A stretch of 63,168 bases of DNA, counting the filler, from Octopus bimaculoides (lineage: Eukaryota), in the NCBI RefSeq assembly GCF_001194135.2. It is 7 parts of 6 records of this genome, joined end to end, with 100 filler letters (N's around TTAATTAATTAA, not from the genome) between each part and the next. Parts side by side here need not be neighbours in the genome. Positions count along the whole stretch, not along the records: positions 41,933 to 55,527 come from NC_069006.1; 6 more parts are not named here. One strand, given 5' to 3'. The notes beneath the pieces are model-generated. The model searched no databases and was not told the origin of the DNA. It saw only the letters and a list, made by a program, of their open reading frames with translations. This document shows positions 46,059 through 48,311 of this stretch, piece after piece. The translations under genes and the position numbers were made by a program. Every line of letters starts with the position of its first letter. Position 1 is the first letter of the stretch.

Positions 46059-46290
46059 ATGTCTGACGTACTCCACCGTCGTGGCTTCCTCGAACGACTG
46101 CGAAAAGGAACTGGGAATTTTGTCCGAAAATTCATCCCGTGTTTCACCAGGCAGAACCTAGGTGACTTAACAGAAAGCGAAACAGATCTTACCCCATCGA
46201 TATATTCCGATTTTTCTTCGTTGGCGTTATCGTCCGTAACAGACGATTCCACGAGAAATCGGAATCAATCGGCTTTGACACATGAACCGG
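46059..46290 (+). CDS. Coding exon 1 of an unrecognised 168-aa protein (MSDVLHRRGFLERLRKGTGNFVRKFIPCF...THEP)
   Basis: ATG at 46059, 77 non-repetitive codons plus 1 nt, then a strong donor G|GTGAGT at 46291 (phase 1). CpG-rich unique sequence. Confidence 0.8.
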
Positions 46291-46507
46291 GTGAGTTTTC
46301 ATGAAACAGTTTCAAACTTTTATATAAGACATAAAGCTACACAGATTATTATATATCTTTTCTATTTATCTATCTATTTGTCTACATAAATTTATATAAA
46401 TAAGGATAAGATCGATATTTAAAATATTGATTTTATCAAGTGGCCAGGATGGGAATAAAAACCATCAAAGGTAACAATTATTTAAAATTATAATATAGGG
46501 TATCTAA

Positions 46508-46609
46508 GAGATACCGCCACGCTGAAAAATAGCAGTCAAATCTTGACTCTAAACCACAAGTGGTTTAGAGTCAGGATTTGACTGCTATTTTCCAGCGTGG
46601 CGGTATCTC
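46508..46609. repeat. 49-bp inverted repeat with 4-nt loop in intron 1
   Basis: Arms at 46508-46556 and 46561-46609, two differences. Confidence 0.95.
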
Positions 46610-46761
46610 CATTTGTCTACATATCTAGCTACATATATATCGTACACAGACACACACACACACAAAGGCCCTCTTTACTCCTCGGACTTAGTCCCCGATA
46701 AAGCGGTGATGGGGAAAAGCACAGACACAAAGACGTACATACATACACACGCACACATACA

Positions 46762-46797
<36 letters not shown>

Positions 46798-46949
46798 TAT
46801 AACGGGCTTCTTTCAGTTTCCGTCTATCAAATTCACTCACAAGGCTTTGGTCGACCCGAAGATATAGCAGAAAACACTTGCCCAAGTTGCCACACAGTGG
46901 GACTTCTTATTTCTTATTGCCAACAAGGGGCTTCTTACTACACAGCCAC

Positions 46950-47009
<60 letters not shown>

Positions 47010-47010
47010 G

Positions 47011-47041
<31 letters not shown>

Positions 47042-47261
47042 CCTGCAAGAGATACTGCAATTTGTTGCCAGATTTGATTAAATTACTACAGATCTCATTC
47101 CCCAAATCCCTTCCCGTCCTTTCCATGTAAATATATCCTAAAATGTGGGTATAACCACCTGGGTGGTGATGCACTTGCTAGATATAGCAACTGAAATCAT
47201 CTTCAAAAATCATCAGACTGTCTGATCTGATTTCTATAATTATTTTTGGTTCTGTTTTCAG

Positions 47262-47324
47262 ATTTTACTCCTACAGAGACCATTTTACAAGACTTTGACC
47301 TGTTTCAACGAAGGTCCCTCGAAG
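47262..47324 (+). CDS. Coding exon 2 (63 nt, phase 1-1; DFTPTETILQDFDLFQRRSLE)
   Basis: Acceptor TTCTGTTTTCAG|AT and donor GAAG|GTAAAT; open in the frame inherited from exon 1. Confidence 0.8.
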
Positions 47325-47574
47325 GTAAATAAGAATAATAAGTGGCCTTCCTAAATTTTTGTTTGACATATTTCTAAATTGTTGACTCATATGTAAAATA
47401 TATCTCATATGTAAATTATATTATTTATGTGAGTGATTATGAGTGTGCCTGTGTGTGTGAGTGAGCGTGTCTGAGTGAAAGACAAACAGGGAAAGAGGGA
47501 GAGAGAGATGGGGAAGAGAGAATTTGTGCATGTATGCAGTAGCGCTGTTATCTTTTATCTATTTATATTTTCAG

Positions 47575-47634
47575 ATTTCTCTTCGATCCATGCTGACACT
47601 TGCGATGAACTGTTTGACGAACAAATAGACTTTG
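47575..47634 (+). CDS. Coding exon 3 (60 nt, phase 1-1; DFSSIHADTCDELFDEQIDF)
   Basis: Acceptor TTTATATTTTCAG|AT and donor TTTG|GTACGT; open in frame. Confidence 0.8.
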
Positions 47635-48088
47635 GTACGTTGGAATTAATGCATGTTATAATTTAAGCATTATGCGCATTCAAAAGTTTTGCAATATTTC
47701 AGTAACTTATTTTGCTTTATTCGTGAAGCTGCAGCAAAAACTGCCAAAGAATTCAAAATAAACTCCATAATGTTGGACCGTCTGATGCCACCTTTTTGCC
47801 AATTCTTTGTTTCCCTTCTGATACCAATTCCTATCCTTTGAGGCGAAGAACTCCCTCGCTGAAGCTTCCACCCCACCTCCCCTTAGTTGATGAAGCGTCG
47901 TGAAGGTAGGAGGTGAACTTGAAGGAAAGAGTTCGTCGCCTCGAAGGACAGGAACTGGTATCAGCGTGAGATCAAAGAAATCGCAGAATGATAGCCTTCA
48001 GACGGAACAACACGATGGCTTCTACTTTGAATGCTCGACTGATATAATGTGAAATTATATATAATTGCTTGTTTTTGTCAATTTATAG

Positions 48089-48240
48089 ATGACAATAACT
48101 CAAATGAACACACCACGCCTTGTATTCCACTGATAGTGAGAGACTTCTTTAAAGAAAGTTCTATTCATCTGAAACATTTTTCTCGGGTCATCGTATATTC
48201 TGCAGATGGCCATGTGACCATGTCTATAAATCTCAGCTAA
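48089..48240 (+). CDS. Last coding exon (DDNNSNEHTTPCIPLIVRDFFKESSIHLKHFSRVIVYSADGHVTMSINLS*)
   Basis: Acceptor TTGTCAATTTATAG|AT; in frame to TAA at 48238-48240; donor TAG|GTAAGT 5 nt after the stop. Spliced total 507 nt = 168 aa plus stop. Confidence 0.8.
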
Positions 48241-48311
48241 ATTAGGTAAGTCGTGTTTACATGTTAGCTTTCAAATACCACAATAAACTATCCGATTTGA
48301 TATACATATAT

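What the first reader, a model, noticed from the sequence alone, without database searches (positions are those of the whole stretch)
46059..48245. Four-exon gene for an unrecognised 168-aa protein, not visible as one ORF in the track
Seen: four segments with canonical splice sites join in frame (232+63+60+152 nt = 507 nt). The product is MSDVLHRRGFLERLRKGTGNFVRKFIPCFTRQNLGDLTESETDLTPSIYSDFSSLALSSVTDDSTRNRNQSALTHEPDFTPTETILQDFDLFQRRSLEDFSSIHADTCDELFDEQIDFDDNNSNEHTTPCIPLIVRDFFKESSIHLKHFSRVIVYSADGHVTMSINLS. It has a basic, amphipathic-looking N-terminus, an acidic Ser/Thr-rich middle and a compact hydrophobic C-terminal region of about 40 aa, with no obvious signal peptide. A further intron starts 5 nt after the stop. 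Inference: a lineage-restricted (possibly cephalopod-specific) gene. I recognise no family, which is not proof of novelty.
Basis: partly seen in the sequence, partly recalled or inferred. Interest (0 to 1): 0.75.

Follow-up and report, generated by a model that had tools for sequence, protein, structure and literature searches.

The report
Annotated octopus-only small protein gene

Summary
That protein is identical to RefSeq XP_014789626.1 and UniProt A0A0L8FI24, "uncharacterized protein LOC106883218" of Octopus bimaculoides, so the gene model is not new.

It is not a singleton. About 45% identical relatives exist in O. bimaculoides, O. sinensis and O. vulgaris. All share the same four coding exons and intron phases, an acceptor 10 nt before the ATG and a donor 2-5 nt after the stop.

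Against these paralogs dS is about 1.2 and dN/dS about 0.33 (p = 5e-8), with no frame disruption. This indicates long-term purifying selection on the protein.

It is inflated by a 1.25-kb mariner insertion.

No relative outside Octopus, no Pfam domain, no PDB sequence hit and no fold hit was found. The predicted layout is a conserved basic amphipathic N-terminal helix, an acidic Ser/Thr-rich disordered middle and a roughly 40-aa three-stranded beta C-terminus. Function is untested; a small intracellular regulator or adaptor is my inference.

The finding is correct but ordinary: a taxonomically restricted gene that is already annotated.

The parts
45850..45969 (+). Conserved upstream block. It is either a candidate proximal promoter or the conserved 3' part of a longer 5'UTR intron. 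It contains a perfect palindromic CRE, TGACGTCA, at 45909-45916 and a conserved AATTAATTGAAAT box near 45865.
   Evidence: It is 63-70% identical to the paralog loci although dS is about 1.2. The CRE is the only copy in the 55.6-kb window, where 0.2 are expected by chance. The CRE is conserved in L003-L006.
45970..46058 (+). Highly conserved leader just before the ATG. It may hold a 66-nt 5'UTR intron from 45983 (GT) to 46048 (AG), with a branch-point-like TACTAAT and a pyrimidine tract. The exon carrying the ATG would then start at 46049.
   Evidence: It is nearly invariant across seven loci, about 81% identical once a 20-nt indel is set aside. The coding sequence is only 59% identical. The acceptor ttttaatAG lies 10 nt before the ATG in 6 of 7 loci and reads CG in L005. 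The donor GTTACT is weak, so the intron's 5' end is unsettled.
46059..46290 (+). Coding exon 1, 232 nt, from the ATG to codon 78 position 1. It encodes the basic amphipathic N-terminus and the first part of the acidic Ser/Thr-rich region.
   Evidence: The N-terminal 35 codons have dN/dS of 0.15-0.20 against the O. vulgaris and O. sinensis copies. The ratio could not be computed against the two O. bimaculoides paralogs because dS was saturated.
46291..47261 (+). Intron 1, 971 nt, phase 1, GTGAGT...TTTCAG. It holds microsatellites, a near-perfect 50+50-nt hairpin repeat at 46508-46609, a dispersed SINE-like repeat and a conserved block at about 47150-47225.
47262..47324 (+). Coding exon 2, 63 nt, a symmetric phase 1-1 exon. 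It is 48 nt in every paralog, so the query carries 5 extra codons.
47325..47574 (+). Intron 2, 250 nt, phase 1, GTAAAT...TTTCAG.
47575..47634 (+). Coding exon 3, 60 nt, a symmetric phase 1-1 exon. The homologous exon is skipped in annotated isoform X2 of the paralog LOC106880409.
47635..48088 (+). Intron 3, 454 nt, phase 1, GTACGT...TTATAG. It holds an imperfect 92-nt inverted repeat at 47787-47995.
48089..48245 (+). Coding exon 4. It carries 152 nt of coding sequence with the stop TAA at 48238-48240, then 5 nt of 3'UTR. It encodes the conserved C-terminal beta region (IP-IV-D ... IVY..GHVTMS).
48246..50164 (+). 3'UTR intron, 1919 nt, GTAAGT...TTTCAG. The homologous intron is only about 100-120 nt in the paralogs.
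   Evidence: The donor and acceptor align to conserved sites in L002-L006.
48876..50125 (+). Decayed mariner-type DNA transposon inserted in the 3'UTR intron. It has 26-nt terminal inverted repeats and a transposase remnant ORF at 49323-49553.
   Evidence: The repeats at 48876-48901 and 50100-50125 are 96% complementary. The ORF matches the Mos1 transposase at E = 6e-10.
50165..50440 (+). Last exon, non-coding 3'UTR. It has blocks conserved with the paralogs and a candidate poly(A) signal AATAAA at 50415-50420. The 3' end is approximate.
   Evidence: It aligns collinearly to the sequence just after the short 3'UTR intron of all five homologous loci. Identity is 59-62%, with invariant blocks, and third codon positions reach only 47-49%. 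The sequence was read.

Best explanation
Window 46059-48240 is the coding part of Octopus bimaculoides gene LOC106883218 (XP_014789626.1). It lies on chromosome record CM046626.1 at about 15.46 Mb.

Shown: it is a genuine protein-coding gene kept under purifying selection. It is the oldest-diverging member of a small gene family found so far only in Octopus. Every member has:
- four coding exons with three phase-1 introns;
- a conserved acceptor just before the ATG;
- a conserved donor just after the stop;
- a conserved 3'UTR exon.

Predicted: the product is an intracellular protein of about 165 aa with no signal peptide. It has three conserved modules.
1. An almost invariant N-terminus (MSDVLHR-GF--RLRKG--F------C). 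It forms a basic amphipathic helix of net charge +6 to +10.
2. A disordered acidic linker of about 95 aa, net charge -19 to -23, about 25% Ser/Thr, with many CK2-type S/T-x-x-D/E sites.
3. A three-stranded beta unit of about 40 aa that starts with the invariant P-x-I-P-[IL]-I-V-x-D and ends in IVY..GHVTMS.

Inferred, with low confidence: it acts as a small regulator or adaptor. The N-terminal helix, with the invariant Cys28 as a possible lipidation site, would dock on an acidic membrane or a partner protein. The linker would be tuned by phosphorylation. The C-terminal beta unit would bind a partner or self-associate by strand addition. Exons 2 and 3 are in-frame cassettes that can vary the linker length.
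For: Gene model and identity:
- The model is exact.
- It is 100% identical over its full length to XP_014789626.1 and A0A0L8FI24.
- Its genomic place is known.

Family:
- P0002 matches at E = 6e-33 over its full length, and P0003 at E = 5e-11.
- The other members are named.

Conserved structure:
- Six loci in three species give intact reading frames with exon sizes 226-232 / 48-63 / 60 / 152-158 nt.
- All introns are GT-AG and phase 1, and the UTR splice sites are conserved.

Selection:
- Against the paralogs dN is about 0.40 and dS about 1.2, a ratio of 0.32-0.38.
- Synonymous against non-synonymous differences give Fisher p = 4.7e-8.
- Identity by codon position is about 0.59-0.62, 0.67-0.72 and 0.46-0.49.

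Architecture:
- The conserved charge pattern, a helical hydrophobic moment of 0.57-0.65 and the motifs come.
- AlphaFold2 with five sequences gives a helix at 10-32, disorder at 29-127 and strands at 131-141, 146-157 and 160-167, with pLDDT about 70 in the strands.

Cassette exons:
- Isoform X2 of the paralog lacks exactly the 20 aa of exon 3.
Against: - I could examine no transcript or expression data. Support for transcription is indirect: the gene sits in two protein databases and is conserved.
- No ortholog of this particular copy was found among annotated O. sinensis or O. vulgaris proteins. Recent loss of function in O. bimaculoides alone therefore cannot be excluded.
- The structure model has low confidence overall (mean pLDDT 48, pTM 0.34) and rests on only five sequences.
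- The functional reading rests on composition and motifs. No homology to any characterised protein backs it.
- dN/dS among the closer family members is 0.46-0.64, a weak constraint.
Confidence: 0.85

Rival explanations
1. The locus is a decaying or non-functional divergent paralog, or an over-prediction by annotation software. Its reading frame would be open only by chance or by recent descent.
For: No ortholog of this copy was seen among annotated proteins of O. sinensis or O. vulgaris. No transcript evidence was available here. The family does produce pseudogene copies, for example L003 1537-1770 with stops and no ATG. The 3'UTR intron has taken in a transposon.
Against: With dS of about 1.2 to every relative, the frame, all six coding splice sites, both UTR splice sites and the intron phases are still intact. 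dN/dS is 0.33 at p = 5e-8, with a coding-type pattern across codon positions. The most conserved family motifs are kept. The leader and the 3'UTR are also conserved.
Confidence: 0.08
2. The basic amphipathic N-terminus is a mitochondrial presequence. The mature protein would then be an acidic matrix or intermembrane-space protein, not a cytosolic or membrane adaptor.
For: The first 33 residues have net charge +6 to +10. In the paralogs they contain only one acidic residue. They are rich in R, L, S, F and G and have a helical hydrophobic moment of about 0.6. A helix is predicted at 10-32.
Against: The N-terminal 17 residues are the most conserved part of the protein, nearly invariant at dS of about 1.2. 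Where the ratio could be computed, dN/dS for codons 1-35 is 0.15-0.20. From general knowledge, presequences usually conserve physicochemistry rather than sequence. No dedicated targeting predictor could be run here.
Confidence: 0.12
3. The protein is a docking or inhibitor-type regulator of a Ser/Thr phosphatase such as calcineurin. The invariant P-x-I-P-[IL]-I strand would act as a PxIxIT-like site, and the acidic phospho-linker would modulate binding.
For: The motif P-[CR]-I-P-[IL]-I is present in all family members at the start of the C-terminal beta unit. It is predicted to be a beta strand, which is the conformation in which PxIxIT peptides bind calcineurin (general knowledge).
Against: A six-residue degenerate motif is weak evidence. 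The sixth position is Ile rather than the usual polar residue. No LxVP motif is present. No homology to any known calcineurin partner was found.
Confidence: 0.07

Closest known systems
Octopus bimaculoides LOC106880393 (XP_014785795.1) and LOC106880409, with O. sinensis LOC118765860 and LOC118765758 and an O. vulgaris hypothetical protein. All are annotated as uncharacterized.
   Same: The length is similar, 161-168 aa. The N-terminal motif is the same. The layout of basic, acidic and beta regions is the same. All have four coding exons in phase 1, an acceptor 10 nt before the ATG, a donor 2-5 nt after the stop and a homologous 3'UTR exon.
   Different: The query is only 45-48% identical to them, with dS of about 1.2, and sits on another chromosome record (CM046626.1 rather than CM046613.1). 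It has 5 extra codons in exon 2. Its 3'UTR intron is 1919 nt instead of about 110 nt because of a mariner insertion. One paralog lineage lies antisense inside an intron of a Delta-like (DSL/EGF) gene in both O. bimaculoides and O. sinensis. The query has no called neighbour within 10 kb.
Taxonomically restricted (orphan) genes of cephalopods. These are known as a class from the O. bimaculoides genome paper (Albertin et al. 2015, recalled from memory, since the paper could not be opened here) and from later cell atlases (PMC9712504).
   Same: There is no detectable homolog outside the lineage and no Pfam domain. The product is short and largely disordered. dN/dS is fairly high.
   Different: This family shows clear signs of age and constraint. 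It has several paralogs at dS of about 1.2, and the exon-intron structure, leader and 3'UTR are conserved. It is therefore not a recent de novo reading frame.
Small, heat-stable, disordered phospho-regulators such as DARPP-32, inhibitor-1 or the ARPP/ENSA proteins. This is an analogy for how it might work, recalled from memory and not tested.
   Same: The protein is small and mostly disordered. It has a basic segment followed by a very acidic Ser/Thr-rich segment with CK2-type sites, and short conserved linear motifs.
   Different: No sequence similarity was found in any search. Their defining docking motifs are absent, including RVxF. This protein also has a predicted C-terminal beta unit that those proteins lack.

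Membership tests
Unnamed Octopus family of LOC106880393 / LOC106880409-like proteins | Significant full-length sequence similarity | tested here: met
   P0002 matches at E = 6e-33 over residues 1-166. The family profile scores the query at E = 5.5e-76. There are 52 invariant columns among six full-length members.
Unnamed Octopus family of LOC106880393 / LOC106880409-like proteins | The same gene structure: four coding exons, three phase-1 GT-AG introns at homologous positions, an acceptor about 10 nt before the ATG, a donor 2-5 nt after the stop and a homologous 3'UTR exon | tested here: met
Any curated protein domain family (Pfam) or any protein of solved structure | A significant match by sequence, profile or fold | tested here: not met
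   The precomputed Pfam column reads '-' for all eight family proteins. In PDB, phmmer gave a best E of 0.69 and the profile search gave no hit. Foldseek against PDB gave a best E of 1.2.
Secreted peptide or neuropeptide precursors | An N-terminal hydrophobic signal peptide | tested here: not met
   The N-terminus MSDVLHRRGFLERLRKG is charged. It has net charge +6 and no hydrophobic core. This was judged by inspection, because no signal-peptide predictor was available.
Calcineurin-docking proteins (PxIxIT class) | A PxIxIT-type strand motif plus demonstrated binding to calcineurin | tested here: inconclusive
   The motif P-[CR]-I-P-[IL]-I is conserved in all members, but the match is degenerate and no LxVP motif is present. 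Binding cannot be tested with these tools.
Mitochondrial presequence-bearing proteins | A positively charged amphipathic N-terminal helix that lacks acidic residues and is cleaved on import | tested here: inconclusive
   Charge and hydrophobic moment fit. Unusually strict sequence conservation argues for a specific binding motif instead. Import and cleavage cannot be tested here.

The most novel reading that the evidence does not exclude
The family could be an octopod innovation encoding small disordered regulators whose transcription responds to cAMP or Ca2+ signalling through CREB.

- A perfect CRE palindrome is conserved about 145 nt upstream of the ATG in the query and in the four relatives readable there, at dS of about 1.2.
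- The leader is unusually constrained, intron ends are conserved, and a 3'UTR intron and a 3'UTR exon are conserved.
- Together these point to tight post-transcriptional control, for example of activity-dependent genes in the octopus nervous system.
Probability: 0.1. Interest if true: 0.6.

Novelty: already known. Interest (0 to 1): 0.25.

Why it matters
The gene model adds nothing to the existing annotation. The family-level picture is a modest addition, and I found it in no paper:
- an Octopus-restricted family of several copies;
- a conserved phase-1 cassette exon structure;
- non-coding parts (leader, intron ends, 3'UTR) conserved as well as, or better than, the coding sequence;
- a conserved CRE.

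The analysis also shows that the current O. sinensis and O. vulgaris models for family members are mis-spliced, although intact four-exon genes lie at those loci. If expression proves to be neural and activity-dependent, the family would be a tractable example of a lineage-specific regulator in cephalopods.

Tried and rejected
- **Word-indexed search.** The search with the query alone found only the query itself. It missed the 46%-identical paralog. Relatives appeared only in the exhaustive HMMER scan.
- **P0004.** This 1660-aa bacterial repeat protein matched at E = 2.5e-4 through five short stretches. I rejected it as a low-complexity chance match.
- **ADAM17 propeptide.** The match at E = 0.69 was rejected as chance.
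- **Single-sequence AlphaFold2.** The model was uninformative, with pLDDT 33.
- **Foldseek against PDB.** With the five-sequence model, nothing scored below E = 1.2.
- **Rfam.** At a permissive threshold it returned only matches below the gathering score, to microsatellites and hairpins scored as miRNA families. None is credible. No tRNAs were found.
- **Apparent duplicate of exon 1 in L002 (11278-11445).** It is identical to exon 1 and abuts an N gap, so it is probably an assembly artefact.
- **A box C/D snoRNA in the conserved intron-1 block.** I rejected this by eye. The C- and D-like boxes occur only in the query and are too close together.
- **A conserved 3'UTR hairpin (GGGTG...CACCC).** It has only 5 invariant pairs and no covariation, so I make no claim.
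- **Literature.** Searches for all family LOC and XP identifiers, including the supplements of one octopus brain atlas, found nothing. The supplements of the visual-system atlas are not held. The 2015 genome paper could not be opened.
- **Transcript-derived copies.** The exact-sequence look-ups placed the protein only on the genome assembly. It is unclear whether octopus transcriptomes are in that collection, so this says nothing either way.
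Full report
**1. Check of the observation**

- The exons are 46059-46290 (232 nt), 47262-47324 (63 nt), 47575-47634 (60 nt) and 48089-48240 (152 nt with the TAA stop).
- They total 507 nt and translate to the quoted 168 aa.
- The introns start with GTGAGT, GTAAAT and GTACGT. They end with TTTCAG, TTTCAG and TTATAG behind pyrimidine tracts.
- All three introns are phase 1, so exons 2 and 3 are in-frame cassettes.
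- The further donor, AG|GTAAGT, lies at 48245/48246, 5 nt after the stop. A good acceptor, ttgttttcag|AGATGA, lies at 50164/50165.

**2. Identity of the gene**

The protein is 100% identical over its full length to a protein already in public databases. That entry is XP_014789626.1, "uncharacterized protein LOC106883218 [Octopus bimaculoides]". The UniProt entry is A0A0L8FI24_OCTBM.

It is encoded once, on chromosome record CM046626.1 of assembly GCA_001194135.2, at 15,464,125-15,466,306. No other gene is called within 10 kb on either side (locus L001). The gene model is therefore not new.

**3. The gene belongs to a family**

An exhaustive HMMER scan of 1.84 billion representative proteins found two true relatives.
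- P0002 is O. bimaculoides LOC106880393, 163 aa, 46% identical, E = 6e-33 over its full length.
- P0003 is O. sinensis LOC118765860.
- A bacterial repeat protein also appeared, which I reject as a chance match.

Searching with P0002, and then with a six-sequence profile, added LOC106880409 (two isoforms), LOC106879479, O. sinensis LOC118765758 and one O. vulgaris hypothetical protein. Nothing appeared outside Octopus even at E <= 1. None of these proteins has a Pfam domain on record.

I fetched the loci and mapped the exons with tblastn. The short or odd O. sinensis and O. vulgaris models turned out to be mis-spliced. Intact four-exon genes are present at those loci.

Six loci in three species give open reading frames of 161-168 codons.
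- Exon sizes are 226-232 / 48 (63 in the query) / 60 / 152-158 nt.
- All introns are GT-AG and phase 1, at homologous positions.
- Annotated isoform X2 of LOC106880409 lacks exactly the 20 aa of exon 3. This confirms that exon boundary independently.

Other observations on the family:
- A degraded tandem copy lies upstream of LOC106880409.
- The exon 4 of a further copy lies upstream of LOC118765860.
- An apparent exon-1 duplicate in L002 abuts an assembly gap and is probably an artefact.
- One paralog lineage lies antisense within an intron of a Delta-like DSL/EGF gene in both O. bimaculoides and O. sinensis.

**4. Evidence for selection on the protein**

Nei-Gojobori estimates between the query and each relative give dN of 0.39-0.42 and dS of 1.1-1.2, a ratio of 0.32-0.38. 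The excess of synonymous change is significant (66/110 against 114/372 sites, Fisher p = 4.7e-8). Identity by codon position is 0.58-0.62, 0.67-0.72 and 0.46-0.49.

The N-terminal 35 codons are the most constrained. Their dN/dS is 0.15-0.20 against the O. vulgaris and O. sinensis copies. It could not be computed against the two O. bimaculoides paralogs because dS was saturated.

O. bimaculoides and O. sinensis/vulgaris copies of the other lineage differ by dS of 0.25-0.35. The query lineage therefore split off well before these species separated. It has kept its frame and all its splice sites since then. Among the closer members dN/dS is 0.46-0.64, so the proteins evolve fairly fast.

**5. Non-coding anatomy**

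A filtered, collinear comparison of L001 with the other loci shows conservation beyond the coding exons.

*(a) The 3'UTR intron and last exon*
- The sequence from 50165 to about 50400 aligns to the sequence that follows a short intron of about 100-120 nt after the stop codon of every relative.
- The acceptor is conserved, and so are several invariant blocks.
- In the query the intron is 1919 nt because a decayed mariner element lies inside it. The element has 26-nt terminal inverted repeats at 48876-48901 and 50100-50125. Its transposase remnant matches Mos1 at E = 6e-10.

*(b) The leader before the ATG*
- The roughly 86 nt before the ATG are about 81% identical to the relatives, better than the coding sequence at 59%.
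- They end in a conserved acceptor 10 nt before the ATG. A branch-point-like TACTAAT and a pyrimidine tract precede it.
- A possible 66-nt mini-intron (45983-46048) has only a weak donor, GTTACT. The acceptor AG is CG in one O. sinensis copy.
- The 5' structure is therefore unresolved.

*(c) The upstream block*
- A block at 45850-45969 is 63-70% identical to the relatives.
- It contains a perfect CRE palindrome, TGACGTCA, at 45909-45916.
- This is the only copy in the 55.6-kb window, where 0.2 are expected by chance. It is conserved in every relative that is readable there.
- Whether the block is promoter or intron depends on the unknown transcription start.

*(d) The end of intron 1*
- A block about 40-110 nt before exon 2 (about 47150-47225) is conserved in all seven loci.
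- This may relate to regulated use of the cassette exons.

**6. The protein**

No signal peptide is evident. The three-part architecture is conserved.
- *Residues 1-33:* net charge +6 to +10 with a helical hydrophobic moment of about 0.6. The invariant positions are M1-R7, G9, F10, R13-G17, F21, C28 and R31.
- *Middle:* net charge -19 to -23, with about 25% Ser/Thr, about 25-30% Asp/Glu and many S/T-x-x-D/E sites.
- *Last 40 residues or so:* near neutral, with invariant P129, I131, P132, I134, V135, D137, I153-Y155 and G159-S164.

AlphaFold2 with one sequence was uninformative. With five family sequences it predicts:
- a helix at 10-32 (pLDDT 55-68);
- disorder at 29-127;
- a three-stranded beta unit at 131-167 (pLDDT about 70).

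No relative was found in PDB by sequence search, by profile search or by Foldseek, where the best E was 1.2.

**7. How it most likely works (inferred)**

It is probably a small intracellular regulator or adaptor. The conserved basic helix, with Cys28 as a possible lipidation site, would be one docking module and the C-terminal beta unit the other. The acidic, phosphorylatable linker joins them, and cassette exons could vary its length.

Two rival readings cannot be excluded, and they are scored in the report sections.
- The N-terminus is a mitochondrial presequence.
- The P-x-I-P-[IL]-I strand is a PxIxIT-like phosphatase docking site.

A pseudogene or annotation artefact is unlikely given section 4. 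It is not excluded, because I could examine no transcripts and found no annotated ortholog of this specific copy.

**8. Comparison and verdict**

The closest known entities are its own uncharacterized paralogs. Beyond them it belongs to the general class of taxonomically restricted cephalopod genes. No paper in the searchable library mentions any family identifier.

The gene is already annotated, however, and genes restricted to one lineage are common in octopus genomes. Interest is low to moderate.

The points worth passing on are:
- the family description;
- the mis-spliced models in O. sinensis and O. vulgaris;
- the unusually conserved non-coding parts, including the CRE.

Noticed in passing
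window 45909-45916: A perfect palindromic cAMP-response element, TGACGTCA, lies about 145 nt upstream of the ATG. It is the only copy in the whole window, where 0.2 are expected by chance. It is conserved in the query and in the four relatives that are readable there, despite dS of about 1.2. Whether it lies in the promoter or in a 5'UTR intron is unknown.
   Followed up: partly
window 45970-46058: The leader before the ATG is more conserved than the coding sequence, about 81% against 59% identity to the paralogs. It may hold a 66-nt mini-intron (45983-46048) with a weak donor, GTTACT. One O. sinensis copy (L005) has lost the acceptor AG.
   Followed up: partly
window 48876-50125: A decayed mariner-type transposon lies in the 3'UTR intron. 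It has 26-nt terminal inverted repeats that are 96% complementary and a Mos1-like transposase remnant at 49323-49553. It explains why this intron is 1919 nt here and about 110 nt in the paralogs.
   Followed up: yes
window 47150-47225: An intronic block 40-110 nt upstream of exon 2 is conserved in all seven family loci (...GGTGG.GC..CACTTG.TAGATATAGCAAC...). It may be a splicing-regulatory element for the cassette exon. It does not look like a snoRNA.
   Followed up: partly
window 46508-46609, 47787-47995 and 45580-45730: There are three hairpin-forming inverted repeats: 50+50 nt at 96% with a 2-nt loop in intron 1, 92+92 nt at 71% in intron 3, and 48+48 nt at 94% upstream. They resemble MITEs or palindromic repeats. 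The first gives only Rfam miRNA matches below the gathering score.
   Followed up: partly
window 45275-45463, 46800-46900, 51513-51973 and 54740-55080: A dispersed SINE-like repeat recurs here (core ...TTTCAGTTTCCGTCTACCAAATCCACTCACAAGGCTTTGGTCGGCCCGAGGCTATAG...-like). It also occurs many times in all fetched Octopus loci at 75-97% identity. It is often flanked by microsatellites.
   Followed up: no
L004 10001-11473, L005 10001-13319 and L006 10001-11475: The public O. vulgaris and O. sinensis protein models for family members (186, 116 and 111 aa) are mis-spliced or truncated. Each locus in fact holds an intact four-exon gene of 161-162 codons.
   Followed up: yes
L002 and L006, whole loci: One paralog lineage lies antisense inside an intron of a Delta-like (DSL/EGF) gene of about 1055 aa, in both O. 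bimaculoides and O. sinensis. Within-species paralogs (dS about 0.20) are closer than these syntenic orthologs (dS about 0.25-0.35). This suggests gene conversion.
   Followed up: partly
L003 1537-1770 and about 2930-2971; L005 74-229: Extra family copies lie in tandem. A degraded exon-1 and exon-4 remnant lies 8.5 kb upstream of LOC106880409. An intact exon 4 of a further copy lies 10 kb upstream of LOC118765860.
   Followed up: partly
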